Assembly (NCBI RefSeq): GCF_006345805.1
Contig: NC_043003.1
Location: forward strand, 17,422,001 to 17,486,000
Direction: 5' to 3'
DNA from: Octopus sinensis
Lineage: Eukaryota
DNA: 64,000 nucleotides
Shown: piece after piece, positions 3,892 to 33,499 of the stretch
Layout of the letters: every line of letters begins with the position of its first letter
How positions within the stretch are numbered: position 1 is the stretch's first letter
Notes under the pieces: generated by a model
What the model was told of the DNA's origin: nothing
The model's database searches: none
Seen by the model: the letters and a program-made list of their open reading frames with translations, nothing else
Program-made: the position numbers and the translations under genes

Positions 3892-3994
3892 GCTGATTGG
3901 CCTCAACCAATGCCCGCCATTGGTCGTATTGCTAACTTCAGTTCATTGCGTAAACACAGACCCAAGGAGTACCAGATATATGATACCTACTTTG
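3892..3994 (+). CDS. unc-22: Twitchin exon 1 in window: C-terminal regulatory (autoinhibitory) tail of the kinase domain
   Basis: ttatctag|GCT...TTTG|gtaagg. Translates ADWPQPMPAIGRIANFSSLRKHRPKEYQIYDTYF, nearly identical to the Aplysia twitchin kinase regulatory tail as recalled (ADWPAPQPAIGRIANFSSLRKHRPQEYQIYDSYF). Phase 0 to 1. Confidence 0.95.
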
Positions 3995-5634: not shown

Positions 5635-5752
5635 ATCGCCGTGAAGCTGTTCCTCGCTTTGTGCGTAAGCCACGTAATGTTTTGGCTGGTGAAGGCCAAA
5701 TTGCTAAATTTGACTGCAAAGTCATTGCAGTTTCACCTCCTATTATTACATG
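5635..5752 (+). CDS. unc-22: Twitchin exon 2: first half of post-kinase Ig domain 1
   Basis: ttcag|ATCGC...ACATG|gtatgt. DRREAVPRFVRKPRNVLAGEGQIAKFDCKVIAVSPPIITW. Phase 1 to 2, in frame with exon 1. Confidence 0.95.
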
Positions 5753-6310
5753 GTATGTATCATAATTTATAATCTACATTATATATGTGAAATTAATTAT
5801 ATATTATAATTGTTTTAAAGGAATTAAAATTTCTCATCTGAAATTAACAGGGTATATTTTACTTACTTGAGAGGTTAGCATGCATTAGCTTCTCAACACC
5901 TGTTATAAAGACACCTCCTTCTCAACTACAACTTCACTCTGCCAAAGGTGGTTTTTCATTGAGTTACCTGGCAACCTTAATATTGCCAGTAGCACAAAAA
6001 ACGTACACACTACACTCTGTAAAACGGTTGGCATTAAGAAGGAAATTCAGCCATAGAAACCATGCCAAAGCAGACAATGGCGCAAAACCCAGTCCTCTGG
6101 CTCATCAGATTCTGTTGAACCATTCAACTCATGCCAAGAAAGAAGACCAAATTTAAAAGACGACGATGATGATGGTGATGACGATGATGATGGCAATGAT
6201 GATGATGATAAAGACGATGAGGATGGGAATGGCTATATAGTTAAGATGTTCACTTCACAACCATAGGATCTTGGGTTCAGACTTTTACTATGACCCCATA
6301 TTGTGATTTG

Positions 6311-6616
6311 TGGAGGCACATGGCCTAGTGGTTAGAGCAGCGGACTTGTGGTCGAGGGATCATGGGTTCAAATCTCAGACTGGGCGATGTGTGTGTTTAT
6401 GAGCGAAATCCCTAAGCTCCACGCAGCTCCGGCAGAAGGTAATAGCGAACTTCTGCTGACTCTTTCGCCACAACTTTCTCTCGCTCTTTCCTCCTGCATT
6501 TTGCAGTTCACCTGCAACGGACCGGCGTCGTGTCCAGGTGGGGAACATATACGCCAAGGAAACCAGGAAACCGGCTCTTACGAGCCAGGCATGGCTCAAG
6601 AAGGAACAAACAAAAA
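6311..6616 (+). mobile_element. tRNA-derived SINE, family B (also ~37845-38132 and ~55378-55682)
   Basis: A box TGGCCTAGTGG and B box GGTTCAAATC, shared body, A-rich tail. Three similar copies. Confidence 0.85.
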
Positions 6617-6665
6617 AAGAACATATTATGATTTATATTTATTTAAATTTTTTTTTTTCTAATAG

Positions 6666-6838
6666 GGCAAAGGAAGATTCCATACTCACTCAGAGTGTAA
6701 AACATATGCAGAAATACAATAACAACGAATATGAACTGAAGATCAGCAGACTGAAAGTTGACGACAAGGGTGAATATGTTGTAAGAGCAGAAAACTCTTT
6801 TGGTAGCCGTGAAGAAGTTGCTATACTTAAAGTCGAAC
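6666..6838 (+). CDS. unc-22: Twitchin exon 3: second half of post-kinase Ig domain 1
   Basis: aatag|GGCA...GAAC|gtaagt. AKEDSILTQSVKHMQKY...DDKGEYVVRAENSFGSREEVAILKVE carries the I-set DxGxY motif. Phase 2 to 1. Confidence 0.95.
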
Positions 6839-7860: not shown

Positions 7861-7912
7861 CAATGAGAGAAGTCAGCCGTCAACCATCTAGCCGTGAGAG
7901 TACACCTAAAAG
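7861..7912 (+). CDS. unc-22: Twitchin exon 4: 52-nt Ser/Arg-rich inter-Ig linker exon
   Basis: tttcag|CAATG...AAAAG|gtaatt. PMREVSRQPSSRESTPK. Phase 1 to 2, which reconciles the phases of exons 3 and 5. Confidence 0.88.
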
Positions 7913-9431: not shown

Positions 9432-9654
9432 CCTTTTCGTTACTGTATTTATTTTGAGATGCTCTGTGTTTCTTTCGATTATTTTAAATATAACAAAGAA
9501 TTTAGTAAAATAACTTACAGTTATCATTCAGCTAGTGTTAGGAACATAAATTGTGACTAAGGTTTGGTGGAAGATTTTAATTCAAAACTTATGGAAACAA
9601 GACATTTGTACTACAGACCTAGGAGCCGTTTGAGCCGGATTAGTAATGAAAGGG
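9432..9654 (+). mobile_element. piggyBac-like MITE, family G (tandem minus-strand copies at ~45690-45920 and ~45946-46170)
   Basis: TTAA|CCTTTTCGTTAC...GTAATGAAAGGG|TTAA gives short TIRs and a TTAA TSD. Confidence 0.75.
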
Positions 9655-9883
9655 TTAAGCATTGTATGCATAAATGAAATCATCATATGATTCAAAGTTA
9701 CATTTTTTCTAATATTTATTTTGTATAACATAATTACAGACGTCGATAAAATGATATCATTACAGTACAGTTAATGGTCGTAGCTTCCTTAGTATATGGA
9801 ACATTATTTTTCTTTTATTCCATTTAAAAAAATATTGATGCAACAAACATTTTTGAGTCAATTACTCTGTTTTACTTCAATAG

Positions 9884-10025
9884 GAAGCGTGTGTCACAAG
9901 AGAGAGCAGTTGAGAAACCAAAGGATATTCCTCCTTCATTTACTTTTGATCTTCGTGAAAGAATTATTCAGCTTGGTATTGGATTCAAGCTTCTGTGTAC
10001 AGTCGCAGCTTTGCCACATCCAAAG
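9884..10025 (+). CDS. unc-22: Twitchin exon 5: end of linker and first half of Ig domain 2
   Basis: aatag|GAAG...CAAAG|gtaaat. RKRVSQERAVEKPKDIPPSFTFDLRERIIQLGIGFKLLCTVAALPHPK. Phase 2 to 0. Confidence 0.93.
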
Positions 10026-10079
10026 GTAAATATACTAGTTTAACTACAATAATCTACTTATGTAATAGAACTTATCTAA

Positions 10080-10472
10080 ATTTTAGCATTCAAATTACTT
10101 TGTCAAAAGTAATGCATATTTATTCACATTGTTTTGAATTAATATGCATTGTCTCATAGCTTAAATATTTCGATGATGTGATTATTTATTTTCAGAATGA
10201 CATTGTGGGATAGGTGTGAGAGGTTGGATCTGGCCAGTTTAAATCATAACCTTTTAGCATTCAGATTATTCTGTCAAATGCAATGCTTATTTATTCACAT
10301 TGTTTCGAATTAATCATGCATTGTCTCACAGCTTTGAAATTTTAGTGAGGTCATTGTATGTTTTTAGAATGACATTGGAGGGTTAGTGGGAGAACCTGGG
10401 TCTGGCCGATTTAATCATAAAGCAGGTAGAATAATTGGCCAGATATGGCCAGTTTAAATGGTAAAGGGTTGA
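10080..10472 (+). mobile_element. piggyBac-like MITE, family H, two tandem copies (another at 54332-54542 on the minus strand)
   Basis: CC(T)TTTAGCATTCA...TAAAGGGTT termini. The 54332 copy is flanked by TTAA. Confidence 0.65.
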
Positions 10473-10827
10473 ATTATAACAATGTGTTATAGTGTGTTAT
10501 GGTGAAGGCACGTGGTCAAGTGGCTAGAGTGTCACACTCATGACCATAAGATCACGATTTCAATTCTTAGAGCCGGTGATATGTTATGTTCTTATGTAAA
10601 ACACTTCATTTCCCATTGTTCCAGGCCAATAGTTCCAACAATAGCAGGGAATTTAACCCTTGCATTGGACCAGCATCCCATTCGGTGGAGATGAGAGTAT
10701 TGTAATCTCAGTTACTTTTATTCCATGGAAACTGGCTTAAGTTCCAGCTTTATGAGTTCTAGGTCTCAAGACACCCAAGTGTTTGTAGTGTAATACATAA
10801 TATGTATTCTTCATGAATCATTATGAA

Positions 10828-10861
<34 letters not shown>

Positions 10862-11441
10862 GAAGGTGGGAGCTGGCAGAATCATTAGCACCCTGGATGA
10901 AATAATGCTTAGTGGTATCTTAACTAACGCTAAGTTCTGAGTTCAAATTCTGCTGAAGTCGACTTTGCCTTTCATCCTTTCAGGGTTGATAAATTAAGTA
11001 CCAGTTGTGTACTGGGGTCGATCTAATCAACTGGCGCCCCCTCACCCCAAATTTCAGGCTTTGTGCCTATAATAGAAAGGATTATTATTACTTTTATTAA
11101 ATTCTACTTCTCGGAGCTCTCAATTTTACTTGCTCCGGTTAATTCTGTGAAAGCAGTTAATTATGTTGTCAAGGGTCTCAAAGGGTCTCTTTCCATGAAT
11201 TATAAGATACGGTACTTAGATGTCAGGTATCATTGAAGATACTGAACACCCAAGTACCAATCAAAAAATCCTTGCTGTCTCCAACAGAATAGTTTTTTTT
11301 TGAGTATGTATTTATCCTCATATCAGTTTCAATTTCTCTGACATATTTCTCAAACTTGGTTGTTGGTGCTCCTACAACTACTGAAATGGCAGTTACTCTC
11401 TGTTATTATTATTATTATTATATTATTATTATTACTATTAC

Positions 11442-11475
<34 letters not shown>

Positions 11476-11480
11476 TGCAG

Positions 11481-11661
11481 GTCACATGGCTTAAAGATGG
11501 TAAAGAAATAAAGACTGGTGATCATTATATGGTTACTTATTCATATGGAATCTGTTCATTAGAAGTACACACAGCTGAACTTTCTGATGCTGGTAAATAC
11601 ACATGTATTGCAGAAAACTCACTAGGAGAGGTTCAGAGTTCATGCCGAGTGAATGTTGAAA
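11481..11661 (+). CDS. unc-22: Twitchin exon 6: second half of Ig domain 2
   Basis: ttgcag|GTC...GAAA|gtaagt. VTWLKDGKEI...DAGKYTCIAENSLGEVQSSCRVNVE. Phase 0 to 1. Confidence 0.96.
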
Positions 11662-13202: not shown

Positions 13203-13445
13203 ATCGCATAGGTGATATAAAGCAAAAACCAATTGGCTTAGATTTGTCTAAGCAGAAACAGAGCAGAATTACCCGTGTTGCAAGACGTACCAAAAATCTT
13301 GATGATATGCTTAATTCTCTTGACAACGAGGAAAGTAGCAGCAGACATTCCTCACGCACTACTACTTCTACTAGTGAGGATGGAACAATCAGAACAACTA
13401 CAACTGTTCAATCTTCATCTTCATCCAGCAGGACAACACACAAAA
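13203..13445 (+). CDS. unc-22: Twitchin exon 7: Ser/Thr-rich linker, phase 1-1 (243 nt); reads through to TAA at 13469-13471 if the donor is not used
   Basis: tttttatag|ATCGC...CAAAA|gtatgt. NRIGDIKQKPIGLDLSKQKQSRITRVARRTKNLDDMLNSLDNEESSS...SSRTTHK. Open reading frame in register with exons 6 and 8. Confidence 0.85.
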
Positions 13446-15598
13446 GTATGTTTAATGGAGATTTAATCTAAAAATGTTCTTATATATATATATATGATGC
13501 AAAATACAAAAAATCTTAAAACAAAAAGTCATTTTAAAATACAATTAATTATTTAAGTTTTCCAACTTGATGTTGGTTCAATTGGCCTAACTCTACTAGA
13601 CTATATTTTCTGACAATATTTATTAATATTAATACTGACTTTTTTTTTAACAAAAAAACAAAAAGGAGAAAAGACAATCCTTTTAAAGATCTCTTTTGTA
13701 TTTGCCAAACCTTTAGTATTTATTAAAAATGAAGGTAACCCTAATACAAATCATATATGCACACACACAAACACACACACACATAAATACTGAATTTATC
13801 AGAAGTAAAACTGTTAAATGTAATTAATGGTTGAATAGCATTATCATTGTCCCAATAAAAATATCTCAAGTTTTCTACTGAGATATCTGAAGTAGTATAT
13901 AAAAAGTGTGAAAAATAAAGGTGGTAATACTGCTACTAATAATGGTGTCTGGCATGGTACAGGCAACACTAGTAGTTAAGGAAAAGAATTCTATTTATAT
14001 ATTCTAAAATAACAAATAAAAAAAAATGAAAATAAAATATTTTGCAAATTAATTTAGCAATTCTGAGGCTGTGCACTTTCTAGAAGGTAAATGGAAAAAC
14101 AAGAAAGATCTTGTTTTTAAGTATTTTATTTTACCTGAATTCACTAAGTTTACATTAAAACTTACTTCATGCATATATAACAACACATTGAATCTAATAT
14201 CTAATTATTTCAATGATTAGATTTAATGGAGTAAATCTATTAAATTTCTTATATGCATTTTTTATTTATATGTTCATCTTTAGCACGAAAAAATTCTGAT
14301 TTCTTTATCTTGTAAGGAAAAATAAACTAAAAGCAGTTTGTGAATTCTAATAACAATTTGCCTTCTAGTTTGTACGGCTGAAAAACTAAGAAAAAAAATA
14401 TAGAGAAATGAATAGAGAACTGACTAAAGTTTTCTTCTTTCGGTTGATTTATTTGAAGGAAGAAATTTAAGTGTAATTCATTAACCTTCATTTTTTTTTC
14501 CCTATACTCCTTCCTAGTAAACTTTCCTTCAGCCTTGAAATTTATCTGCAATGAATATTAAAAAAAAATAATTTAAATATCTCAGTTAAAAACTGAAGAA
14601 CTTAATAAGAATACTAAGAAAAGATTCTGTTGATCAGTTAGATCAATTTTATGTATTAATTTAATTAATATTCTGAAAGATACTGAATTGACCTGTGCTA
14701 TTAAAATTTGCTTAAATTTCAACAATTGTATTTTGTTTCGTAAATAAACTTTTTCATAAATTATTCATAGAACTTAATTTTTCACTTAGAATTGTTCTTA
14801 ATCACCGTCAGTCATTTGCTTTGTTTATTATTTATGGTTCACAATTATTTTTATGTGCTTCATCACAGTAATGAGTTAAGTTTGGAGAAATAACATAACC
14901 AATCATCATCTACTTAATTAAATAAATTGAATATTTCTCAATAAGAAAATTAAGTTAATATTATATGATTATTTTAATACAAAATTATCATGTTCTAAAT
15001 TAAGTAAAAACAATAAAACCTTTCAAACAAAATGCAAGGACAAAATAAAAAATATTAAGTTCATTAAGAAAGTTAATCCAAGTTATTATGCTACTATGAA
15101 AGAGAATAATACTGTCACAGAATAGATGATTTTATATCTTATTTTTTTAATATTTCAAATAGTTGAATAAAATTATGTATAAAAAAAACTAATTTCAATA
15201 ATCTATAATTATTTTGTTTTAACAAATCCTTCTTAATCTGAAGGTTAAAAAGTAGTTTGAGTTTTTCTACTTAATTTTACAGATATTTATCTGCAAGAAT
15301 TGAAGAATACTTTTGCATACAATTCTTTAAATCATTGTAATTAAATTAAAATGAATTTTGCTATAGTGCTACTTTTAGTAGTTCATAAAGTACATATACA
15401 AAAGGTACATAGAAGGAAATCTTTATTTTAGTAAAGAAAGTGAGGAGGAAGTCATATGACATCGAGTTAGAGTTGTATGCTACTTATATACATAATAATT
15501 TGGTGGCATAATGTGTTATATTAAAAAAAAAGTTCCAATAGATAGGTTTTATTTAACAGATTATTCAATAAACTTTTCGAAGTTTTCCATCTGATGTA

Positions 15599-15656
<58 letters not shown>

Positions 15657-17743
15657 CATAAGACTGTTATATTTTAATGTTGTTAGTGCTGTATTTCCAA
15701 ATTGTAGTCCAAGATATATACTTCTAATTTCATACACTATCAATTGAATTTTATAAGGCTAATTCAGTTCATAAACAATGTTTATTGCAAAATACATATG
15801 TGTGTTCATATTTCTAGATAGCACATTTAATATTTAGTATATGTGTTTATGTGTGTGGTAAATGATAAATATCCATCAATTCTCTTTTTGTTAATTGCCT
15901 TTATGAAACACAGCTGATGGGTGGGGGTGAATAAGAAATGAAGAAAGGAAAAACAATTATATTTCAACTGTCACTTATTCTATTTATCGTAATTTGTTGC
16001 AAGCTGTATAGTATTTGCATCTTTTTCATGTAGAATAGAACTTAAAAAAACTAATAACTGTACATTGCATGAATGGAATCATCTAGAAAAATTATTTGCT
16101 TGCTTGAATTAGCTATTCAATTGATCTCATACTTGGTAGATTTTTAAAAGTGTTTGGTACGTAGAATTTAATATGTGAATATCTTTTTCACACTAGATGA
16201 TCTTAGTCACTGAAATTATTAACTTTTAAGATAATCAGAAGTGAAAAGACATATTTATCAGCTCATATTTTTTTGCAAGAAACTATAATTGTTTATAAGG
16301 AATCAGAATATAGTTTTTCTTCTGGAATTTTTTTTAGTTTAAGTGTACTGTTTTTGATGTTTTTTATGCTTCCTACAATGTTTTTTTTTTCTCCAGAAGA
16401 CAGTATTTTGTATATGTTATTTCATTAGACTTATTCATTTCATACCATCTATAAATCAAAATATTTTAACTCAATTTGAAATAGTTTTAAAAATTTCCAA
16501 TTCTAAATAATTTACTCTTGAATTGAACAGAATATATCATGTTTATCATGATACTCGTAGTTATGCAACACCAGCTAAATATATATACATATATATACAA
16601 TTAGTTTTCAGTCCAAAAATATTTTTTCAACTGAAATAAATATGATATTAATCAAGAATATGTGAAATTAGTCTAGTGCTTGGAATTATTATTTGATGTA
16701 GAGATTTTGATGTGCTTTAACTGAAAATTTTTTCTCTATATTAGTTGTGTAGAAAATTTTGCTACTGTCCAAGTTTAAGTATATATTCTAATATTGTTCA
16801 GGTATACTCTGATCCCAGAAACAGAAAATAATTAGCGTAATTCATTAACAAATTGAAAGATTTCCATAAAATACATCTCTTTAATAGTTAACGGTGGTGC
16901 ATCAGCATGGCCGCAGCTCTGTGCTGAAACTACAAGAAAAACAAAGGTTTTCCTTTCATGTCAAAAATATGCTATATTGTATGAAAAGTGAGTTGATCAT
17001 TCTTTAAGGAATTTCTTTATTTAAATTTATCATAAATTTGACTAGTATAAGTGAAGAAACTTCATGTGGCAGAACAACTAAATATATATATACCAGGATG
17101 TCTTAACAGCTTTATGAGCCCTGAGGAAAAGCAATATATCAAAGTCCTTTCATTTATCTATTGGCAGCAAACCACTGACCACATAATACCTTGACACAAT
17201 ACTCTGTGTGTGTATATATATATAATTGTAGTATATGCATTTTGATGCAAAAAAATACATGTTGCTTAAGTCATTTGTCTCCTGAACAATTTCATAAACA
17301 GGGGAAACTCAGAGTAACAATAGAGGGATCAGCTTCAAATGAATATATCACCATCTTTTTACATCATCACAATTTTGATGTCCACTACTTCATGCTGACA
17401 TACACTGAATGGGTTTCACAACATAAGTCCATGTGTTTCATCTTCTGGCACACCATGTAACAGAGAAAACTGGCAAAACTTTGCTGCTATGTACATCATT
17501 TTTTTCCCCTTAGTGGTGGGATGAATATTTTTTATGGTTGGATACCTTTCTTATCAACAATCATTTTACAGCAGCAACTGACTACATTTTATCATGTAAC
17601 AAGCACTAGAGGTTGTCTGCAACAAAAGTCAGATCTACCCTGCATCAGGTGTTACTAAGACTTAGAGCTCTCCGAGATGAGTTACCAGTTTAGAGAGCAG
17701 ATAGCAGGAGTTTTGAGCATTGTAAGCTCAATAGTTCACAGCA

Positions 17744-17785
<42 letters not shown>

Positions 17786-17928
17786 ATAATGTATATTTAA
17801 ACACAAGAGAAATCCACTTATAGGAATTCAACACGCTAGAAAGAACAGCTAGGTTCTATAACCACAAAAATTAGGGATAAAATTCGACAGGAACGAAATG
17901 AAAAATAAAATCATTTTACCATCTAGTT

Positions 17929-18002
17929 TCCTGGACCAATTGGTTTCTGATTTTAGTTTAGCAAGTAAAGGAACTCACTAGGTGCAATCTTCTTCAGCAG
18001 GA
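17929..18002 (-). ncRNA. Minimal type I hammerhead ribozyme motif
   Basis: UCCUG-CUGAAGA-AGAUU..AAUCA-GAAA-CC AAUU GG-UC-CAGGA. Stem I has 5 perfect pairs, the core is intact, the triplet is GUC and stem III is palindromic. There is an A-A mismatch at the base of stem II. Confidence 0.75.
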
Positions 18003-18268
18003 CCACCTAGGGTTAAACGTTTACACATGGAGCGATCAAACTATTTGTCCCGAATTTATACATCCTAACTTTTTCAAAATCTACTGCGCAGCCACAGTCC
18101 TTCGCCAGCAATAAAAAAATGCCAACTTTTAAAACCGAAAATTATCCAAAAACTTACAATATTTAATCATATCAAAGGGAAATGTGTGTATATATTTATA
18201 TATATATACATATATATATATATGCATATGCATGTAGTTACTTTCATATACACACACACATATATATA

Positions 18269-18317
<49 letters not shown>

Positions 18318-21111
18318 ATAAAATGTTATATTAAAAATTTTTTGCTTTCATATCTGAATAAAACAATGCAAAAATCTCAAAACCTAATATTGTCCACATT
18401 TTAAGAAACCACAACTAAATTAAATAACACAAATTCATTTTGCTGAAGAATGAATTTTAGTATTTAAGAGAAAAAGTGTAAGTGTCAAACTATGAAACTT
18501 AACACACACATTCTTGTTTGTTTTTAATGTAGACATATCTGATAATTATAATTTGAATTTTAAAAGTTGCTTTTTTTTATATATAAATGTATGCAAAAGT
18601 GCATATTGAACATAATGAAAATTTTTTTTTATATATAAGCGGTTTCTTTGATTAATTTTAATTTGAAAGTTTCATGTATTCACATATAATAATCGAACAC
18701 ATTCCTATGGAAAAAAGAAACAAAATGAATTTTATTTTAAGGAATATTTTCTGCTAGTTATCTTAAGTCTCCAGAATATTTAAGAAGCAGAAACAAATCA
18801 ATAAAATGTGGCTTTTTCCCCAAGTTAATTTGAAAACAAAAAAAAAGAACCTTTCAAAGTTTGCTTAGCTACATTTGGCTGAAATTGGAGCGAACTGTAT
18901 AATGGGTTTGATCATTTAAAGTAGTGCCATATACTTGGCTACTTCAATACCACACAAAGCTATGATGAGAGCAACCTATTTCAACTTCCACCTGAGGACA
19001 ATAGCACCTGGTAGGTGAATATGCAATATGCATGTATGGCAGCATGAGCCACAGAAGTGTCAGTTCTGCTCTACTTGGAATGAAAGATTTTTCAAATGAT
19101 AGAAGATTTTTTTGTTGTGCAATATTTATCCCTTGAAGCATATATTATTTATATATTCTTAATTTTTACCTTGTGTTTCCCCCCATTCTACCTTTCCTAT
19201 ATATTATATAACACTGTGTGCAAAGTTTTACCAACCCAAAGAACTTCCCTTTTCCCATAAATTTTTTTTAATTATGACTGACCTTGGGGTGCTTTTCATT
19301 GACAAGAATGTTTTAATATTCTTCATTTTGTAATTATTTTATTTATTTCCCCATTTTGGAAGCATTGTATATTCTTTACTCTTTTCCATTTTCATATTCA
19401 CACAAAACATTACTGCATGTAAGGATACAATGCATAAACACGTGAGGATAAGTTTAACTGTAATAGTCTAGGAATTTGCTTTGCTATATAAAAGAAAACT
19501 CAAAATTAGATATTTTTAATATAAATTACAATGTTAGTATGCATAGGCTAGAGGCAACAAATGTCAGATTGATAAAATTCTTAGATTCATTACATTTCAA
19601 TATTTTTCTATCCTCATATATAATACTGCTCTACCATTTTGAGCTAATTTATTACATTTTATTTTCAGTTTCTATTCACTTTTTTCATAAATTCAATCAT
19701 CTTGATAAACCTTCTGTATTTTAAATTTTATTATAAATTTGTTTTCATTTCATCAACAAACAAGTATTCACCAATTGAAAGTATAATAAGTGATAACAAT
19801 AACTTACATCTATAATTGAATTTTAAGTAACAATATAGTTATCATAACAAAAAAAAATATCTAGAGGCAATTTATGAATCTTTTTTTACTTTATTTGAAT
19901 ATTCATATATTCATATCTTATGGAATATATTTCTGATATTTTTTAGAATATTTTTGAAATTTTAGATTTTGTGTTTTCCAAGACTAATTTTAATATTCAG
20001 ATTTGTTCTATTTTTTCCTTATGATTGTTTGCGTTTGAATTCTAAATTGAAATCTAACTTGGTAACTTGCTTTAATTAACATTAAATTTGGGAATTGGCG
20101 TGCTTTTTTTTTTTGTATATATTTTAGAACATTCCTGAAATTCAAAATTATTTTTTGAAATATATATATCTTGACTAGAAGTGAATTGTTTTATATATCA
20201 AGGATATTTACTAACAAGAAACAAATGTGGTGTTTTAACTCCAAAATGTAGCAAAAAGATATGAAATTTATTTACACAGCTACTTTAAAATGAGAAAATG
20301 GACTTCTGTTTTGTTATTTCATACTTACATACACACATATATATGTGTGTACATATAAATATGTGTATGAATGTATGTACATATGTGTGTGTGTGTATAC
20401 ATATATAAATATACATACACACACACACATATGTAAATAAGTATATATGTATGCACATATATATATAGATATATATATATTTATATGCATATATATATAT
20501 CTGTATATATACAGATACATATATGCATATATACACATACATATATATTTATATGTTTATACATACATACATATATATATTGTATATATATATATATATA
20601 TATATATTTATTTATAATATACATATATATATGATGCATACCATATTAATATTAATATACATTTTGCTTCATACTGCATCTTTTTTATCATCTTTTGTGT
20701 TCCAATAACCTACCCTTTTTTTATTGTGGTGTTAAATGGAAAAAGAAATTAAAAACAAAATAAACTCCCATGTATCTATTAATTTATTATAAGTATAATA
20801 TAATACACACATTTAATTTAGGAATTTTTTTATTGGTGATAGTTGTATACTTTTTAATGAAATATGAAGCTTTACAGTGATTCAGATATTATTTACAAAA
20901 TTTTAATTTCTCTTTATGAGTATTTATAAATTTAATTAAAAATAAATTTATTCATATCTAATGTGAATTATAACATTTAAGGAAATTAATCTAAAAATAT
21001 TTAAAATCACACTGCTAATATTTTTTTGTGTGTATGAAAAATGCTTAAAAATTTGCTTAAAAATTGATTACAAAAATGATATAAGTATAATGAGTCTTGT
21101 TTCCATTTCAG

Positions 21112-21242
21112 ACGAAATTGATCTACCAAAATTCACCAAGCCACTTCAGTCGCAGGCTCTGAATGAAGGTGACAAACTTACCTTAAAGTGCACTGTTGAA
21201 TCAAGTGAAGAACCTGATATTGTGTGGTCAATAAACGATAGG
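21112..21242 (+). CDS. unc-22: Twitchin exon 8: first half of Ig domain 3
   Basis: tttcag|ACGAA...GATAGG|gtaaaa. EIDLPKFTKPLQSQALNEGDKLTLKCTVESSEEPDIVWSINDR. Phase 1 to 0. Confidence 0.94.
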
Positions 21243-21606
21243 GTAAAATATAATTTATCCATATTGTGCTTGAGTTATAATTTAGAATATTAGTGTGATA
21301 ATATTCACTATCCAAGTGTGGTCAATGCCAGTACTGCCTGACTGGCCCTCATGCCAGTGGTATGTAAAAAAAGTACCCACTACACTCTCAGAGTGGTTGG
21401 CGTTAGGAAGGGCATCCATCTGTAGAAACCTTGCCAGATCAGACTGGAGCCTGGTGCAGCCTTCTGGCTTGCCAGCCCTGAGCCCAACCATTCAACCCTT
21501 GCCAGCATGGAAGGCAGACATTAATATTACTACTAATAATAATAATAAATGTCATATTTTGTTTCATTTCATATTTATGAAAATATTGTTATGTTTACTT
21601 TTATAG

Positions 21607-21760
21607 ATTATTAAGAGTAATGTTGCTTCCCAAACGTACTCAAATGGTGTGTGCACACTACAGCTTCCAGAACTCCTTCCAAGTGATAAAGGAATATATG
21701 TTTGCAAAGCTACTAATTCTGCAGGAGAATCAAGTACATCAGCAACTGTCCATGTTAAAG
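21607..21760 (+). CDS. unc-22: Twitchin exon 9: second half of Ig domain 3
   Basis: tatag|ATT...AAAG|gtgagc. IIKSNVASQTYSNGVCTLQLPELLPSDKGIYVCKATNSAGESSTSATVHVK. Phase 0 to 1. Confidence 0.95.
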
Positions 21761-23298: not shown

Positions 23299-23412
23299 TG
23301 CTTGAAAAACCTGTCATAACTGAAACAGGAAATCCACCATGTGTTACAAAACCCCTAACTGGTCTTGTGGTGAAAGATGGAGATGCTGTTTCTTTGAGTT
23401 GTGAAATATCTG
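23299..23412 (+). CDS. unc-22: Twitchin exon 10: first half of Ig domain 4
   Basis: ttttaag|TGCTT...TCTG|gtaagg. VLEKPVITETGNPPCVTKPLTGLVVKDGDAVSLSCEIS. Phase 1 to 1. Confidence 0.93.
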
Positions 23413-23705
23413 GTAAGGTATTTTCTTGGTATATCAGACTATATTGTTGAAAATTTGTCTAAAATCATAAAATTAAAGTAGCCTGGAATATTTTCATCTA
23501 CTGAATGAAATTAAAGCAAATTATAAATATCAACCAAATGTATTGGAGAAGATATCTGTGGCTGTGTGGTAAGAAGTTTGCTTCTCAATGACATGGTTCT
23601 GGATTCAATCCCACTGCATGGCATCTTGGGCAAGTGTCTTCTGCTATAACCTTGGGCCAACCAAAGCCTTGTGAGTGAATTTAAGAGATGAATACTGAAG
23701 GAAGC

Positions 23706-23793
<88 letters not shown>

Positions 23794-24191
23794 ATGTATA
23801 TGTGTGTGTATGTGTACCTTTGTGTCTATGTTTGTGCACCTGCTTCTTGACAACCAGTGTTGATGACAGCATCTCTATAACTTAGTGGCTTGGTAAAAAT
23901 AAAACCCCAGAAAACTAGTAGAATAAGTACAAGGCTTTAAAAAGATAAGCCCTGGGGTAGATTCATTTGACTAGAATTCTTCAAGGCAATTGCCACAGCA
24001 TGGCCTTAGTCTAATGACTGAGATAGATAAAAGATAAAAACAATTTTTACGATTATATCTAATAAAATATTTGAGTATAAAAATATCCTATAATTACTAA
24101 TTATAGTTTAATTTGTACTCTTAGCTTTATATGAATTCATTTTTTGACCTTTGTTATTTAAATTGATTTTTAGAAGGATCTTATTTGTATA

Positions 24192-24487
24192 ATTCTGTTG
24201 TGTCTGGGGAGAGTCATTTTCTTTTTGTGCCTTATAATTTAACACACTGACCAGTAAAATTTCCACTTATTTCTTATTTTTATTTTCCTAAACTTTTCGT
24301 TGCATCTTGCAACCTTTTCAATAGTCTTGACACACATACATATATAGTCAAAACTATTGAAAAGGTTGCAAGACACAACGAAAATTTTAGGAAAATAAAA
24401 ATAAGAAATAAGTGGAAATTTTACTGGTCAGTGTGTTAAATTATAAGGTAAAAAAAAGAAAATGACTCTACCCAGACACAACAGAAT
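24192..24487. repeat. Foldback palindrome, 140-bp arms and 15-nt loop, in twitchin intron 10
   Basis: 24192-24331 is the near-exact reverse complement of 24347-24487. Same family as ~5404-5575 and 61209-61935. Confidence 0.95.
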
Positions 24488-24671
24488 ATGCTTCAACACG
24501 TGAACTCATATAAAGAATCTTGCAAACCAAATCCCAAAACGAAATATTTGTATAATGTTTCATGTAATTGCATATTGTTTTTGTTTTTGCACTTTAGTTA
24601 TTTTTTAAGTGTGAAATATATTTTTTTAATGGTTGTAATGCAAGACTAATGAACTTTAAACTTTCATTTAG

Positions 24672-24869
24672 GAATGCCAAAACCAAGCATCACTTGGTTA
24701 CATGGTGAAAATAAGGTTGAAAATTCTGAAGAATTTGCATATGAAAATAGCGATGACACCTATAAATTAATAATTGCTGAAGTATTTCCTGAGGATGCTG
24801 GTATCTATTCCTGTGAAGCATCAAACGAGGCTGGTAGAACATCCTGTTGCTGTACTTTGAAAGTTGTTG
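24672..24869 (+). CDS. unc-22: Twitchin exon 11: second half of Ig domain 4
   Basis: catttag|GAATG...GTTG|gtaaat. GMPKPSITWLHGENKVE...EDAGIYSCEASNEAGRTSCCCTLKVV. Phase 1 to 1. Confidence 0.96.
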
Positions 24870-25870
24870 GTAAATACATAACCTTATATTTTTGTAGTTG
24901 CATTTTTATTATACAAAAGGGTGCTGAAAAGTGAAAAGTTCCTGGTTTTAAGGGTATCACAAAAGGCCTAGTTGGAGGCCCAACCTTCTAAGTTCTTTTA
25001 CAAGGCTTAGAAAAACTGAAGGACCTTTAGAATAAGTATGTGAATCTGAGAGGAGAATATGTTAAATAAAATCATGATCAACTGACCCTCTTGCATTTTC
25101 TTTTACCCAAAGCCAATAACTTTGCAGCACCCACTTGTAGTTTGGTTGAGATTGAAGTGAATAATATATTACTATAAAATATATTATATAATAATATATC
25201 ATGGTATAAGCGAACTTAAAAACAATTCAAAATATCTAGATGTGAATTTTAAACATAAAACATTTTAGTAGGTAGAATCTACAATTATTTTAGATTGCAT
25301 ATTTAATAAAAATATCACCAACATCAAAATAAAAATTAAATCGAAATTGTAGTTAAAATACCCATGCTGGTGACATGTATAAAGCACCGTCCGAACATGG
25401 CAGATGCCAGCGCCGCCTGACTGGCGTCCATGTCGGTGACACGTAAAAGCACCAACATTGAAGAACTACTAAAATGACATTGTCATTATTAAGTTGGTGT
25501 TGTTCTAAGTTCAAATTACACAGAGGTCAACTTTGCCTTTCATCCTTCCAGGGCTGATAAAAGAAGTACCATTTGAACACTGGATTCGATGTAATTGATT
25601 TATGCCTTCCTCCAAGGCTGCTAACCTTGTGCCAAAATTTGAAGCCATTTTAAGTTGGTGCAAGGAGCATAAAATTGCCTGAAGTTTTGATGGGAGAATT
25701 TAATTTATATAAAGTTTGTAGTGCAGAATCAGAGGTGTTTTCAAATGAGTTGGTATTAAAAGGGTTACTCCATGATACTAGAAATACTCACTTGGATTAA
25801 GTTTTCTCCTACATATATATATCATCATCATCATCATCGTTTAACGTTCATTTTCCATGCTAGCATGGGT

Positions 25871-25905
<35 letters not shown>

Positions 25906-26007
25906 AGTCTAGTGCAGCCTTCTGGCTTGCCAGCCCTCAGTCAAACCGTCCAACCCATGCCAGCATGGAAAGTAGACGTTAAACAACGACGATGAGGATC
26001 ATGATGA

Positions 26008-26053
<46 letters not shown>

Positions 26054-26067
26054 TATATATGTACATG

Positions 26068-26940
26068 TATATATGTATGTATATATACTTATATATGTAC
26101 ACATGTATATATGTTTATATACATACACACATGCATACATACATACATACATACATACATACTGCCTAAATGCCAATCCTGAGAAGTTAGGCTTCTCAAA
26201 ACCAGAAAGGAGAAAGCTAACTCGATGACTACAGATCTAATCCATCACTGGAACTGTAAAAATCTGTAAAACTTTCCAGAAGTTTATCATTTAAATATAT
26301 ATGAGCATGTCTAGATATGCAACAATATGTATGAAAATGCATACAAATCTGCACATACATACATATACACACATACATACATACATACATTACATACATA
26401 CAAAAATACCGTGTTGTTGATGTTGAATGACAGAACCTTGAATCTAGGTTAGAAACCGGCTCTTTCTCTATTAGCAAGAAATCTTGAAATAAACTGAATG
26501 ACATATATATGTATGTATATATACTTATATATGTACACATGTATATATGTTTATATACATACACACATGCATACATACATACATACATACATACATACTG
26601 CCTAAATGCCAATCCTGAGAAGTTAGGCTTCTCAAAACCAGAAAGGAGAAAGCTAACTCGATGACTACAGATCTAATCCATCACTGGAACTGTAAAAATC
26701 TGTAAAACTTTCCAGAAGTTTATCATTTAAATATATATGAGCATGTCTAGATATGCAACAATATGCATGAAAATGCATACAAATCTGCACATACATACAT
26801 ATACACACATACATACATACATTACATACATACAAAAATACCGTGTTGTTGATGTTGAATGACAGAACCTTGAATCTAGGTTAGAAACCGGCTCTTTCTC
26901 TATTAGCAAGAAATCTTGAAATAAACTGAATGACATATAT
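26068..26940. repeat. Near-identical tandem duplication, ~432-436 bp unit, plus a diverged partial third copy to ~27090
   Basis: ACTGCCTAAATGCC occurs at 26161 and 26597. The copies differ by microsatellite length and at least one substitution. Confidence 0.95.
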
Positions 26941-27136
26941 ATGTATGTATGTACATACATACATACAAACAAACAAAAATACCCCGTTGGTGATGTCAAA
27001 ATTCTACTGAGGAGCATTGGGTCTAGGTTAGAATCTGGCTCTTTCTCTATTGGCAAGAAAACTTGAAGTAAAACTGAATAATGACATACATATGTTTATG
27101 TATAATTAATTTTAATTTTTCTCTATTATTATTTAG

Positions 27137-27250
27137 TTCCAGACGATGAGGTTGTTGGTCCTACATTTGTAACATTTCCTCAATCTCTAAGTATTGAAGA
27201 AGGGACACTCGCTAGGTTCAGCTGCAGTTTTGAAGAAAGTAATGTAAAAG
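27137..27250 (+). CDS. unc-22: Twitchin exon 12: first half of Ig domain 5
   Basis: atttag|TTCCAG...AAAAG|gtgagc. VPDDEVVGPTFVTFPQSLSIEEGTLARFSCSFEESNVK. A second in-frame AG 6 nt downstream (exon start 27143) is also possible. Confidence 0.9.
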
Positions 27251-27363
27251 GTGAGCACTTTACAATTTTTGTAATTAGTTTCCGTCTGGTAAACAGGAAA
27301 AAATATATAGTAAATAAAAATCTGTTAAGATATTAAAGGAGATAACAAATACTTTTATAATTA

Positions 27364-28786
27364 CACTGGTCAACAAAATGAACCTTTTTTTAATCATCAG
27401 AGTTGCTGATTGACTTTTCTGGGTTAATTTTTGATGCTGATTAGGAATCTGAAATCTGATTTCCTCTATCAGGTCACATGTTCATGTTAATGATACTTGC
27501 TCTTTTAACTTATAGGATACGTAAAGCATGTCTCTATAAAATATATTGAATACAAGATACGATAATTTCATGGCTTTTTATTGTACAAAATTAAAATTAT
27601 TGTGTACAAATAAGTTAGAATACACTCAAATGCATAACAACTTAAAATCGTTGGTATTTGGACTTTCTATGGTGTTTTGTCTCAGGTTCATCCCTGTATA
27701 ACATCCAACAGTAGTCAGCTAACATTCCTGCATTCCAAAATCCTTGATATCGTTGTTCTATCGATACAATATCTTGATGAAAGCATTCCCCTTGCTCATC
27801 AGACACTGCTCGAAGGTTCTCTGCAAAAAAGCCCAGATGTGAATCAAGGAAATGGACTTTTAGTGACATCTGACAACCCATTGCAGCGTAGGAGTCTAGA
27901 AGACATTTCACTCCATTTCTAAACTCTAGAGATCTCTTGTTTACAGAGCCATTTGAAGGATTCCTAGGCTTTAAGCTCAATCTCATCCAGTGCTGTGAGG
28001 AAGTGGTTGTCCTTCAGGAGTTCTTTTATCTGCAGACCTATAAATATGCCCTCCTTCAGTTTTGCCTCAGTGATTTTTGGAAATTTAGCCTTTACATATT
28101 CAAAACCTTTTGAGCTTTCCCTGGCAAGTGTCTTCACGAATTGCTTCATGAGGCCAAGCTTTATGTGAAGAAGGGGAAGAAGAACATTTTCTGGGTTTAA
28201 AAGTGTCTTACTGTGGACGCTAGAAACTCCCAGTTCATATGATTTTGCAATCATTCTGATTGCACATAGTGCTTGCTAGTTGCACGACTGTCCCATAAAA
28301 AGCAACAATATTTCGTGAACCCAGATTGCATTCCCATCAACATTCCAATCAACTTCAAGTCTCCACATATTTTCCAGCTGTAGTTTATATACTTTATGGC
28401 ATTAAGGAGTACTTGCATATTTTCATAACACTCCTTCATGTGCACTGAATGTCCTATTGGAATAGATGGTTTCTTATTGCTGTTGTGTAGTAGTAGTACT
28501 GCCTTGAGACTTCGCTTAGCTGAATCAATGAATAAGCGCCATTCAGCTGGAACATGCTCTTGGAACAAACAGTGAAATAACTCATCAGTGTTATTACTGA
28601 AACAAAGTGGTCCATCAACAGAGAAGCATGAAGTCAGATCCCTATTTCTCTTCCTGAAATGAGTAATACAAACATCTTTCTTAAGCAGACACTTTTCTTG
28701 TAGGCGAGATGCTAATAGTTCAGCTTTATCCTTCGACAATGACAAGTCTCTAACTAAATCATTTAACTCTCCTTGTGAGTTAAAGG

Positions 28787-28790
<4 letters not shown>
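27364..28790 (-). mobile_element. 5'-truncated, frameshifted Chapaev3-like (CMC superfamily) DNA transposon in twitchin intron 12
   Basis: Three consecutive ORF pieces contain ELNDLVRDL, WRLFIDSAKRSLKAVLL, ICGDLK, LHIKLGLMKQFVK and SDEQGECFHQDI. The terminus TTA|CACTGG at 27361-27369 fits CAC ends with TWA target sites. The family name is from recall of these motifs. Confidence 0.75.
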
Positions 28791-28830
<40 letters not shown>

Positions 28831-29301
28831 GTCTTTTAAATTTGTTTATGGGAAATGTTTTGAATATGCAAATAAAGCTCCTATTCCATTATGCCAGCCA
28901 CTGGTCTAATGGTCTGACTGGTGAACCAGATTTTGGGGTTTGCATCAAACTGTACTGATATAATGTAAGATAAATATAGTAAAAATAACAATAATCTTTG
29001 GATGAAATTTATAAATATTTTAAGGTTGGACGCCCTTCTTAATACCAAGGTATATATTAAGTATATTATCACAGAATATAATAGTAAGACACAAAAGAAT
29101 CAACATCTGTTCATGATTTAATCAGCAACATACATTTAAGTTTCTATCATCAAAATTTCCCTCTTAACAATAGATCTATACAGTCAAACATCTGGTGTAA
29201 AGGCTTCCTATCCATTTAATGAGTATGATTTATATATTAGGTTCTTTAATGCATTGCACATTCCATCCAAATTAAGCTTAAATTATTTTGACTTATTTCA
29301 G

Positions 29302-29543
29302 TTACCTGGAAGAAAAATAATGAGGAAATTGAAAACACCGGTCGGTTTAAATTCACTGAGAATGATAAGGAATTTGAATTCGAGATCCCAGCAGCCCTAG
29401 CTACAGACAGTGGAGTTTATAAAGTATCTGCAAAAGATAGCAATGATGTAGTTTCTTTATGGACTTTTTCCTTGAATGTGACAGTAACAGATACAGCAAG
29501 CCCAGCACATGTTGATGTTCAAGAACTTCTCAAGTCTATTGAG
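29302..29543 (+). CDS. unc-22: Twitchin exon 13: second half of Ig domain 5 and C-terminal tail
   Basis: tttcag|TTACC...ATTGAG|gtaata. VTWKKNNEEIENTGRFKF...TDSGVYKVSAKD...VDVQELLKSIE. Phase 1 to 0. Confidence 0.92.
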
Positions 29544-31820: not shown

Positions 31821-31823
31821 TGA
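31821..31823 (+). CDS. unc-22: Twitchin putative terminal exon, contributing only the TGA stop codon and followed by 3'UTR
   Basis: Strong acceptor tatttttctttctgtttcag|TGA in phase 0 after exon 13. It is followed by AT-rich sequence without SINEs. Confidence 0.7.
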   Translation, partial: 

Positions 31824-32007
31824 AATTGTGCCAGTCAAGAAATTCATTTGACAATCAACATTCAAACATTGAGCTAAACCTATGAAAAACCAAATGTGAT
31901 AGTCCATCAAATCTTTTAACTTATTGTGGATTATTACTCTCTGTGATGAGTGTTTTCATTTGATGTACAAACAGCTAAGCATGTAATAATGTTTTATAAG
32001 ATCTACA

Positions 32008-32013
32008 AATAAA
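32008..32013 (+). promoter_or_regulatory. First candidate polyadenylation signal (AATAAA) of the long twitchin isoform
   Basis: AATAAA ~185 nt after the stop. Several more occur up to ~32.65 kb, so the real site is undetermined. Confidence 0.3.
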
Positions 32014-33499
32014 TGCTCTCCTTCGGCTATTGGAATTTGAGCACAAATATGTATATATTAAAGCCTATCTAAATTAAAGTATGTATATCAAATTAGACAT
32101 TACAGTTAGTATTATCGATTTACATTAACCAAATCAGTGATAAACTGATGATTTGTTTGAAGGAACAATGAATACAAACATGAAATTTGAATGGAGATTG
32201 AAAATAAAGAGTTTTTGGAATATAAAAAGATTTATATTTTCTTACGCTTTAGGGTAAAATATTTTTATTTTGTTGAGAAAAATAATTGTTTATTACAAAT
32301 AATAGGCCATATATTTAAAATTTTGATTTTTTCTTTTTTTAAATAAAAATAATTTAAAACACTATTTTTCAGTTTCTTTTATATTTTTTTGTATGATTTC
32401 AAACTCCGTGTTTCGCTGATAGGCTATATATATATTTTATACATGCTTGGAGAAATTAATATATTGCATATTTATAGAATATTCTAAGCTGCTTCAGAAT
32501 ATTTATAAACTTAATCAGAATTTGAAATGACCATTGATCTTTCTTTAAAAAAATCAAATTGTTAACTATTTATAATTGTAAATGAAAATCGAAATGTTCG
32601 CTAAGAAAATGTGGGAATTAAAATACTGTTCGTTTGAATAAAGAGTTAAAAAAAATCCATTTCAAAATGAATTTGTTTTTCTTTTATTTTTAATAAGGAT
32701 CTGAAGAACTATAAGTATTTCTACTATAATTCTGTGCTTCTCTAGACCACTTTAACTATGGTTTCCTGCGAAGAAAATTCTCACTTTAGGCAAATGGTAT
32801 GACTAAGCTGCAGTGAAAATGGTTCTTTTATAAGTTAAGTAACTCCAAAAAAACTGATCTAAAAGTTTTCACTGATCTAAAAGTTTATTTATTCTACAAC
32901 ACTGTTTTGTGTGTCTACTATATACTTTATTTGACCTTGATGATCAGGACACAATCAATAGAAAGCTTCTACTGATCTATAAGGATTCAATACTTCTAAA
33001 ATCCTCTCAGTGCTGTCCCACTTGGTATCTGGTGGTGATTATAGTGAAGGAACTTGAAATGCATATATTGATCCATACGGAATGCTCTGAAATTGCTGTT
33101 GGTCTTTTAACATCTGCCTCGAATGACATTTTTCTCCATGGCAAACTGCAGCAAAAATGGCCTTACAGGTCAAATATGTCCCAAACATGTACAAACTGAT
33201 CTGAATGTTTGTTTATTTCACAACACTCCTTTCGATGCCTACTATGTAATATATATGTATATATAACTATGAGTATACACACAAATGCATATATATATAT
33301 ATATAAATATATATATATGTTATTTTGGGATAATGAATATGGGAGAAAATTTTCAACATACCAATGCTTTATATATATATACATACATACACACACACAC
33401 ACACACAACACACACACACACATATATATATAAATAGATGAGTGTATTTTTGCCTTGTTAACAATTAACATGGAAAAAATAAATAAATTGTTACCAGGG

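What the first reader, a model, noticed from the sequence alone, without database searches (positions are those of the whole stretch)
13203..13471. Composite internal/terminal exon predicts a short twitchin ending after two post-kinase Ig domains
Exon 7 has a good donor (AAAA|gtatgt at 13446) that keeps frame with exon 8. Unspliced read-through gives ...TTHKSMFNGDLI* (TAA 13469-71). The exon is also phase 1-1 and 243 nt, so it can be skipped cleanly. Three C-terminal outputs are therefore possible: five Ig domains with the linker, five Ig domains without it, or a truncated two-Ig form with a disordered Ser/Thr tail.
Basis: partly seen in the sequence, partly recalled or inferred. Interest (0 to 1): 0.7.

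Follow-up and report, generated by a model that had tools for sequence, protein, structure and literature searches.

The report
Linker exon of octopus twitchin gene
This is an ordinary internal exon of the muscle protein twitchin, coding for the serine/threonine-rich linker between two of its domains; nothing in the octopus DNA shows the proposed short protein ending here, although transcripts from other invertebrates do end at this same point.

Summary
Window 13203-13445 (+) is a 243-nt, phase 1-1 exon with acceptor tttatag| and donor AAA|GTATGT. Read-through gives SMFNGDLI and a TAA stop at 13469-13471.

It is exon 7 of 14 exons covering the 3' end of a twitchin gene. The order is kinase regulatory tail, 2 Ig domains, Ser/Thr-rich linker (this exon), 3 Ig domains, then stop. 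The exon sits where the mussel twitchin D2 phosphorylation linker sits.

The "composite exon" signature is not distinctive:
- All 13 donors of the gene meet an in-frame stop within 1-60 codons (median 12).
- A stop within 8 codons is expected 44-51% of the time in these AT-rich introns.
- The donor strength is average, and poly(A) hexamers appear only at +277 and +409.

No octopus transcript covering this exon could be found, so neither the short form nor the skipped form is shown.

One unexpected result: ten sequences from an unidentified, probably lophotrochozoan group end at the position matching this exon's 3' end. Five transcript contigs and one genomic contig show a real stop, and the five transcripts have 157-1512 nt of 3'UTR. 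No long form from that group was recovered.

The predicted short architecture therefore exists elsewhere, and in octopus it is untested rather than unlikely.

The parts
3892..3994 (+). Exon 1 in the window: autoinhibitory tail that follows the twitchin kinase domain (ADWPQPMPAIGRIANFSSLRKHRPKEYQIYDTYF)
   Evidence: About 80% identical to the same stretch in P0006-P0008, which continues upstream into a kinase C-lobe in L004.
5635..6838 (+). Exons 2 (5635-5752) and 3 (6666-6838): first post-kinase Ig domain (Ig-a)
   Evidence: Pfam I-set.
7861..7912 (+). Exon 4: a 52-nt micro-exon (PMREVSRQPSSRESTPK) that forms the Ig-a/Ig-b linker. It is needed to keep the reading frame.
   Evidence: It was the only candidate that passed the splice and phase filter. 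'VEP' and the position match relatives. A homologous micro-exon sits in genomic contig L003 at 9599-9655.
9884..11661 (+). Exons 5 (9884-10025) and 6 (11481-11661): second post-kinase Ig domain (Ig-b). Exon 6 ends in phase 1 (GAA A|gtaagt).
13203..13445 (+). Exon 7, the finding: 243 nt, phase 1-1, 81 codons, 36% Ser+Thr. It encodes the linker between Ig-b and Ig-c and is the positional counterpart of the Mytilus D2 linker.
   Evidence: Homology of the KP..L.D start and of the EDGTIRTT..SS..SR motif to linkers and tails of relatives. The D2 position is from review PMC12040844.
13446..13471 (+). Donor GTATGT, then read-through codons (S)MFNGDLI and TAA at 13469-13471
   Evidence: Not distinctive.
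13446..21111 (+). Intron 7: the longest intron (7666 nt; the others are 364-2277 nt) and the most AT-rich (GC 0.253). Nearest poly(A)-type hexamers: ATTAAA at 13722, AATAAA at 13854 and 13914.
21112..21760 (+). Exons 8 (21112-21242) and 9 (21607-21760): third post-kinase Ig domain (Ig-c)
   Evidence: Spliced together in transcript contig L001, which is 95% identical.
23299..29543 (+). Exons 10-13 (23299-23412, 24672-24869, 27137-27250, 29302-29543): Ig-d and Ig-e, ending ...QELLKSIE
31821..32653 (+). Exon 14: its first codon is the TGA stop of the long form. The rest is 3'UTR, with AATAAA at 32637 and the transcript end near 32653.
   Evidence: L001 is colinear with the window at 95.6% identity and ends in a run of A.

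Best explanation
Window 13203-13445 is a normal internal coding exon (exon 7 of the 14 seen here) of a cephalopod twitchin gene. It encodes the Ser/Thr-rich, probably unstructured linker between the second and third Ig domains that follow the kinase. It is spliced 11661>13203 and 13445>21112. The resulting C-terminus is kinase tail, Ig, Ig, linker, Ig, Ig, Ig, ending ...QELLKSIE, with the stop at 31821 and poly(A) near 32653.

The linker occupies the position of the D2 cAMP-kinase phosphorylation linker of mussel twitchin, between Ig21 and Ig22 of 24. It most likely acts as a flexible, phosphorylatable hinge. The in-frame stop 8 codons past the donor is what any AT-rich intron gives, and is not a designed terminator.

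Shown: exon anatomy, frame, domain content, orthology, and use of exons 8-14 in a transcript. Inferred: inclusion of exon 7 in the main mRNA (from conservation of the linker in orthologues), and its phosphorylation role (from position only).
For: - Exon model with consensus splice sites and a continuous 655-aa ORF.
- Five I-set domains.
- The ORF aligns end-to-end with the C-terminus of Anopheles twitchin X7, 36% identity over 647 aa.
- A linker between Ig-b and Ig-c is present in every long-form orthologue whose junction was read: Anopheles, Seison, Neoechinorhynchus, P0146 and three arthropod-type transcripts.
- Shared motifs link exon 7 to those linkers: octopus EDGTIRTT, Seison EDGTMIKT, and the unnamed group GGYRTTYRRT.
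- L001, from a 95%-identical octopus, shows exons 8-14 spliced and polyadenylated.
- Read-through stops follow all 13 donors, and the chance of a stop within 8 codons is 0.44-0.51.
- The donor is of average strength.
- D2 lies behind the kinase between Ig21 and Ig22 (PMC12040844).
Against: - No octopus transcript covering exon 7 was recovered, so its inclusion and the 13445>21112 junction are inferred, not seen.
- Intron 7 is by far the longest and most AT-rich intron. That is the setting in which intronic polyadenylation tends to occur (general knowledge).
- In another animal group the homologous exon is where the mRNA ends.
- The octopus linker has no canonical RRxS/T kinase-A site. RRT, RIT, RHSS and RTT are present, so the D2-like function is only positional.
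Confidence: 0.72

Rival explanations
1. Composite internal/terminal exon. In some tissues the 13446 donor is not used, and cleavage and polyadenylation occur in intron 7. The product would be a twitchin that ends after two post-kinase Ig domains with the Ser/Thr-rich tail ...RTTHKSMFNGDLI and lacks the last three Ig domains.
For: - Ten sequences from an unnamed, probably lophotrochozoan group carry kinase tail, Ig, Ig and a Ser-rich tail. They are P0003, P0006-P0012 and P0184, plus the tail exon read from genomic contig L003. They are 60-82% identical to each other and about 50% identical to octopus.
- All ten end 2-3 residues after a conserved [S/D]-R that aligns with the S-R of octopus ...SRTTHK| at the end of exon 7.
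- L002, L004, L005, L006 and L008 show true stops plus 157-1512 nt of 3'UTR.
- In L003 the tail is a separate exon and the stop lies two codons past a phase-1 GT, the same phase as the octopus donor.
- No long form from that group was recovered.
- Intron 7 is the longest and most AT-rich intron, and it has AATAAA hexamers with GT-rich downstream sequence at 13854 and 13914.
Against: - Nothing in the octopus sequence separates this donor from the other 12.
- The hexamers are no denser than composition predicts.
- No ORF or transcript with the read-through tail is on record.
- In the other group the GT at the homologous point is a poor donor (GTTACT, GTCGAC). Those exons look like fixed terminal exons rather than composite ones, and that gene could be a paralogue.
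- One metatranscriptome contig (L007) also reads through the conserved boundary after Ig-c. Such contigs may therefore reflect unspliced RNA.
Confidence: 0.17
2. Cassette exon. Exon 7 is skipped in some transcripts (11661>21112), giving five Ig domains with Ig-b joined directly to Ig-c and removing the phosphorylatable linker.
For: The exon is 243 nt and phase 1-1, and the junction codon stays Asn. From memory (Kusaka et al. 2008, not readable here), the N-terminal phosphorylation linker D1 of mussel twitchin is alternatively spliced between tissues.
Against: All seven long-form orthologues or transcripts whose Ig-b to Ig-c junction was read keep a linker of about 45-120 aa. Phase symmetry is common in this gene, as in exons 10-12. 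The acceptor and donor are of ordinary strength. No transcript evidence is available either way.
Confidence: 0.1
3. The 13203-13445 stretch is not an exon at all. It would be an open frame by chance in an intron, with exon 6 always spliced to exon 8.
For: There is no direct transcript evidence for it. It is compositionally biased (36% Ser+Thr).
Against: It is a 100-codon open frame in DNA where the median open run is 10 codons. The acceptor and donor sit in exactly the phase needed. GC is 0.395 against 0.22 just downstream. It is homologous to linkers of relatives at the same position.
Confidence: 0.03

Closest known systems
D2 phosphorylation linker of Mytilus galloprovincialis twitchin (Ser-4316, between Ig21 and Ig22; Funabara et al. 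2003, as summarised in PMC12040844)
   Same: The position is the same: behind the kinase, after two Ig domains and before the last three (24 Ig in total in Mytilus). It is a non-domain, Ser-rich linker in a molluscan twitchin.
   Different: The octopus linker has no canonical RRxS/T site. Phosphorylation and any catch-type role in cephalopods are untested.
Twitchin / projectin / UNC-22 C-terminal module (kinase, autoinhibitory tail, 2 Ig, linker, 3 Ig), e.g. Anopheles coluzzii twitchin isoform X7
   Same: The alignment runs end-to-end to the C-terminus (36% identity over 647 aa). The domain order is the same and the protein ends at the same point.
   Different: The linker sequence is poorly conserved. 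Arthropod transcripts share RSRSATKEL just before Ig-c, and octopus lacks it.
Short-ended twitchin-like transcripts of an unnamed invertebrate group (P0003, P0006-P0012, P0184; genomic contig L003)
   Same: They have the same kinase tail, two Ig domains, micro-exon and Ser-rich segment. They are about 50% identical to octopus, and the exon boundary after Ig-b is the same.
   Different: They stop at the point where the octopus exon 7 is spliced onward. Their GT at that point is a poor donor. No downstream Ig exons were seen (only 1.9 kb of genomic sequence was available). The taxon is unknown, and paralogy is not excluded.
Composite internal/terminal exons used through intronic polyadenylation (for example the immunoglobulin heavy-chain secreted/membrane switch; general knowledge)
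   Same: The required raw ingredients exist: a 5' splice site followed by an in-frame stop and AATAAA-type hexamers in a long intron.
   Different: Nearly every exon of this gene has these ingredients. The defining evidence, mRNA 3' ends inside the intron, is missing.

Membership tests
Twitchin (UNC-22/projectin) gene, 3' part | Autoinhibitory regulatory tail directly after an MLCK-type kinase | tested here: met
   Exon 1 encodes ADWPQPMPAIGRIANFSSLRKHRPKEY. The same motif in L004 continues upstream into a kinase C-lobe. The catalytic domain itself lies outside the window.
Twitchin (UNC-22/projectin) gene, 3' part | Five I-set Ig domains after the kinase, arranged 2 + linker + 3, ending the protein | tested here: met
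   Pfam finds five I-set stretches. End-to-end alignment to the Anopheles twitchin X7 C-terminus. The stop and poly(A) end come from L001.
Twitchin (UNC-22/projectin) gene, 3' part | Giant upstream array of Fn3/Ig repeats | not testable with these tools
   It lies upstream of the window.
D2-type phosphorylation linker of molluscan twitchin | Non-domain linker between the second and third Ig domain after the kinase | tested here: met
   Exon 7 lies between Ig-b and Ig-c. The D2 position is from PMC12040844.
D2-type phosphorylation linker of molluscan twitchin | A serine phosphorylated by cAMP-dependent kinase in a basic consensus | tested here: inconclusive
   Basic-Ser/Thr motifs are present (RRT, RIT, RHSS, RTT) but there is no RRxS/T (read by eye).
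Composite internal/terminal exon (intronic polyadenylation) | In-frame stop in the read-through past the 5' splice site | tested here: met
   TAA at 13469-13471. The feature is uninformative because all 13 donors have one.
Composite internal/terminal exon (intronic polyadenylation) | A functional poly(A) site in the downstream intron, stronger or better placed than chance | tested here: not met
   The first ATTAAA is at +277 and the first AATAAA at +409. Density is 4.2/kb in an intron with 75% A+T, which is not above expectation. Other introns have hexamers at +20 to +71.
Composite internal/terminal exon (intronic polyadenylation) | mRNA 3' ends mapped inside the intron | not testable with these tools
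   No octopus transcript covering exon 7 is in the collections.
Cassette (skippable) exon | Length divisible by 3 with symmetric phase | tested here: met
   243 nt, phase 1-1.
Cassette (skippable) exon | Transcripts with and without the exon | not testable with these tools
   No transcripts are available. All seven orthologues or transcripts whose Ig-b to Ig-c junction was read keep a linker.

The most novel reading that the evidence does not exclude
Twitchin may have an evolutionarily recurrent short C-terminal form, made by ending the mRNA at the D2-type linker exon. That form would keep the kinase, two Ig domains and a phosphorylatable Ser-rich tail, and would drop the last three Ig domains. 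It appears to be the only form recovered in one unnamed lophotrochozoan group. In octopus it could be produced as a tissue-specific alternative through read-through of the 13446 donor and polyadenylation in the unusually long intron 7.
Probability: 0.15. Interest if true: 0.55.

Novelty: new member of a known kind. Interest (0 to 1): 0.33.

Why it matters
In bivalves, twitchin phosphorylation controls the catch state (holding tension at low energy cost). One of the two mapped sites, D2, sits in the linker that this exon corresponds to by position. Cephalopod skin papillae show catch-like behaviour of unknown mechanism (PMC6059360). Knowing where the octopus linker exon lies makes it possible to test whether it is kept, skipped or used as an end point. 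A short form without the last three Ig domains would change how the kinase end of twitchin is anchored. At present this is only a hypothesis for octopus. The more solid new observation is that such short-ended transcripts exist in another animal group.

Tried and rejected
1. Octopus proteins or transcripts covering exons 5-9. Only L001 was found. It covers exons 8-14, and its 5' 494 nt are an unrelated reverse-strand RLP24-like sequence (my translation by eye, no tool check), so it says nothing about what precedes exon 8.

2. Exact look-ups of the two ORFs a gene caller would make from exon 7 plus read-through. Nothing is on record.

3. Exhaustive profile search for orthologues. The top 150 were swamped by giant multi-Ig proteins. 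Only Anopheles, Seison, Neoechinorhynchus, a crinoid and P0146 were useful. No named mollusc or annelid twitchin surfaced.

4. Search for long forms from the short-ended group with an Ig-c to Ig-e profile. None was found, and the hits were mostly arthropod-type.

5. Genomic contig L003. The tail exon was found, but the contig ends 1.9 kb later, so the presence or absence of downstream Ig exons is unknown.

6. 3'UTRs of the short-form contigs compared with each other and with L003. No similarity was found, so colinearity could not be tested.

7. Literature. The primary Mytilus papers were not held. No paper in the library reports a C-terminally short twitchin or projectin.

9. Pfam on long non-Ig ORFs in intron 12 and downstream of the gene found nothing.

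10. The taxon of the short-ended group could not be identified. Only sample numbers are known.

Full report
**What is there**

The window is AT-rich animal DNA (GC 0.20-0.44). The + strand carries the 3' end of a twitchin gene. I rebuilt 14 exons from open frames, splice consensus, phase continuity and a related transcript:

| Exon | Coordinates | Content |
|---|---|---|
| E1 | 3892-3994 | Regulatory tail that follows the kinase (ADWPQPMPAIGRIANFSSLRKHRPKEY) |
| E2, E3 | 5635-5752, 6666-6838 | Ig-a |
| E4 | 7861-7912 | 52-nt micro-exon, the only candidate that restores the frame |
| E5, E6 | 9884-10025, 11481-11661 | Ig-b |
| E7 | 13203-13445 | The finding |
| E8, E9 | 21112-21242, 21607-21760 | Ig-c |
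| E10-E13 | 23299-23412, 24672-24869, 27137-27250, 29302-29543 | Ig-d and Ig-e |
| E14 | 31821-32653 | First codon is the TGA stop; the rest is 3'UTR |

- The spliced product is 655 aa and ends ...QELLKSIE.
- Pfam finds five I-set domains.
- The product aligns end-to-end with the C-terminus of Anopheles coluzzii twitchin isoform X7, 36% identity over 647 aa.
- L001, a transcript contig from a 95%-identical octopus, confirms the junctions of exons 8-14, the stop and the poly(A) end. AATAAA is at 32637.

**The observation**

- The acceptor is tttatag|A at 13203 and the donor is AAA|GTATGT at 13446.
- The exon is 243 nt and phase 1-1.
- Read-through gives SMFNGDLI and then TAA at 13469-13471.
- Joining 6-7-8 or 6-8 keeps the frame.

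The exon looks real for four reasons:
- Its open frame runs 100 codons, where the median open run in this gene's introns is 10.
- GC is 0.395, against 0.22 in the next 300 nt.
- The phases fit both neighbouring exons.
- The peptide is homologous to the segment that follows Ig-b in relatives.

**Is the "composite exon" signature more than chance?**

No.
- Reading through each of the 13 donors of this gene gives a stop after 6, 4, 33, 1, 5, 60, 8, 16, 4, 12, 21, 28 and 19 codons. Exon 7's eight codons are below the median of 12 and well inside the range.
- From the base composition of intron 7, a stop within eight codons has probability 0.51. Empirically in this gene's introns it is 0.44.
- The donor matches CAG|GTAAGT at 6 of 9 positions. 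The gene's range is 5-7.
- The first ATTAAA and AATAAA are 277 and 409 nt past the donor. Several other introns have such hexamers within 20-71 nt. The hexamer density in intron 7 is what 75% A+T predicts.
- Phase 1-1 symmetry is shared by exons 10-12.
- One real peculiarity remains. Intron 7 is the longest intron (7666 nt against 364-2277) and the most AT-rich (GC 0.253). That is permissive for intronic polyadenylation but is not evidence of it.

**What the exon encodes**

The 81 residues are 36% Ser+Thr and lie between Ig-b and Ig-c. Mytilus twitchin has 24 Ig domains. Its D2 cAMP-kinase site (Ser-4316) lies behind the kinase, between Ig21 and Ig22 (review PMC12040844). That is after two post-kinase Ig domains and before the last three, which is the position of exon 7.

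A linker at this place is present in all seven long-form orthologues or transcripts I could read: Anopheles, Seison nebaliae, Neoechinorhynchus, P0146 and three arthropod-type transcripts. Short motifs are shared:
- Octopus IKQKPIGLDLS matches KVYKPSALLD in the unnamed group.
- Octopus EDGTIRTTTTVQSS matches Seison EDGTMIKTESYSS and the unnamed group's GGYRTTYRRTEYS.

The octopus linker has basic-Ser/Thr motifs but no canonical RRxS/T. A D2-like function is therefore inferred from position only.

**Evidence on isoforms in octopus**

There is none either way.
- The protein collection holds no octopus ORF covering exons 5-7.
- Exact look-ups of exon 7 plus read-through ORFs found nothing.
- The 5' part of L001 is an unrelated reverse-strand RLP24-like sequence joined at the first base of exon 8. 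This reading comes from my own translation by eye and I did not confirm it with a tool. L001 therefore gives no information about what precedes exon 8.

**An unexpected parallel**

Searching with a relative (P0003) gave nine distinct transcript-derived proteins from JGI metatranscriptomes and one Logan run: P0003, P0006-P0012 and P0184. They are 60-82% identical to each other and about 50% identical to octopus, closer than Seison or Anopheles at 38-40%.

- Each one runs from the kinase tail through Ig-a and Ig-b into a Ser/Tyr-rich tail. The tail carries an RRT that is invariant in the eight aligned proteins and also present in P0184. Each then ends.
- The five contigs I read show real stop codons followed by 157-1512 nt of 3'UTR.
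- In alignment, the stops fall 2-3 residues after a conserved [S/D]-R. That pair matches the S-R of octopus ...SRTTHK|, the end of exon 7, and ...SRYSSDK in P0146, which continues into Ig-c.
- Genomic contig L003, from the same group, shows the tail as a separate exon about 500 bp after the Ig-b exon. Its sequence there is ...AGC CGC C|GT TAC TAG. That puts a GT in phase 1, as in octopus, two codons before the stop.
- An Ig-c to Ig-e profile search found no long form from this group.

Caveats:
- The taxon is unknown.
- The GT is a poor donor, so these look like fixed terminal exons rather than composite ones.
- L003 ends 1.9 kb after the tail exon.
- The gene might be a paralogue.
- Another metatranscriptome contig (L007) reads through the conserved boundary after Ig-c into AT-rich sequence. 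Such contigs can therefore reflect unspliced or intron-terminated RNA.

**Verdict**

The exon is an ordinary internal exon for the conserved post-kinase linker of twitchin. The long five-Ig product with the linker is the best-supported output (confidence about 0.7).

The short form is not indicated by anything specific in the octopus sequence. It is not excluded either, and transcripts of another invertebrate group give it real precedent (about 0.15-0.2). Skipping is merely possible (about 0.1).

Noticed in passing
window 7861-7912 (+): A 52-nt micro-exon (PMREVSRQPSSRESTPK) is needed to keep the frame between Ig-a and Ig-b. Its junction with exon 5 creates KRKRVS, a basic-x-Ser motif. Relatives have an invariant RRAxSxE at the same place, encoded by its own micro-exon in L003 at 9599-9655.
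   Followed up: partly
L001 1-494: The octopus transcript contig from SRR16213286 is chimeric. Its first 494 nt read, by my own translation by eye and without a tool check, as the reverse complement of an RLP24/RSL24D1-like mRNA. The join is at the first base of twitchin exon 8, across a short shared ACAAAATTG. It is probably a library or assembly artefact.
   Followed up: partly
L007 (JGI 3300018959), ORF end at 1150: A twitchin-like transcript from another marine animal carries Ig-a, Ig-b, the linker and Ig-c. It then reads through the conserved phase-1 boundary (AGA A|GTAGCT) to SSSGDR*, followed by 1.27 kb of AT-rich sequence. This is either a three-Ig ending or unspliced RNA.
   Followed up: partly
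P0216, P0235, P0248, P0254, P0268: Arthropod-type twitchin C-terminal transcripts share a conserved R-S-R-S/T-A-T-K-E/D-L-E/D-L-P-P motif directly before Ig-c, at the end of a long Ser-rich linker. It is a candidate conserved phosphorylation site, and octopus lacks it.
   Followed up: no
window 13446-21111: Intron 7 is 3-20 times longer than the other introns of this part of the gene. It has the lowest GC (0.253, with stretches near 0.20) and many AT and CA microsatellites. No convincing extra coding exon was seen in it.
   Followed up: partly
window 27645-28835 (-), in intron 12: Three adjoining long ORFs on the opposite strand (123, 103 and 194 aa), not Ig-like, look like the remains of a mobile-element gene. 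Pfam found nothing.
   Followed up: partly
window, e.g. 4734-5095, 11695-12094, 21285-21603, 22004-22234, 52824-53415: Copies of the same interspersed repeat occur on both strands throughout the window. Their translations recur as ...LPNANHSESVVG... and ...THKGLNTERTNKDRQ... They are probably SINE-type elements.
   Followed up: no
window 40443-41018, 42433-43101, 50247-50594: Downstream of the twitchin gene there are long ORFs that, from memory, resemble retrotransposon and mariner-type transposase fragments. Pfam gave no hit at E<=0.01.
   Followed up: partly
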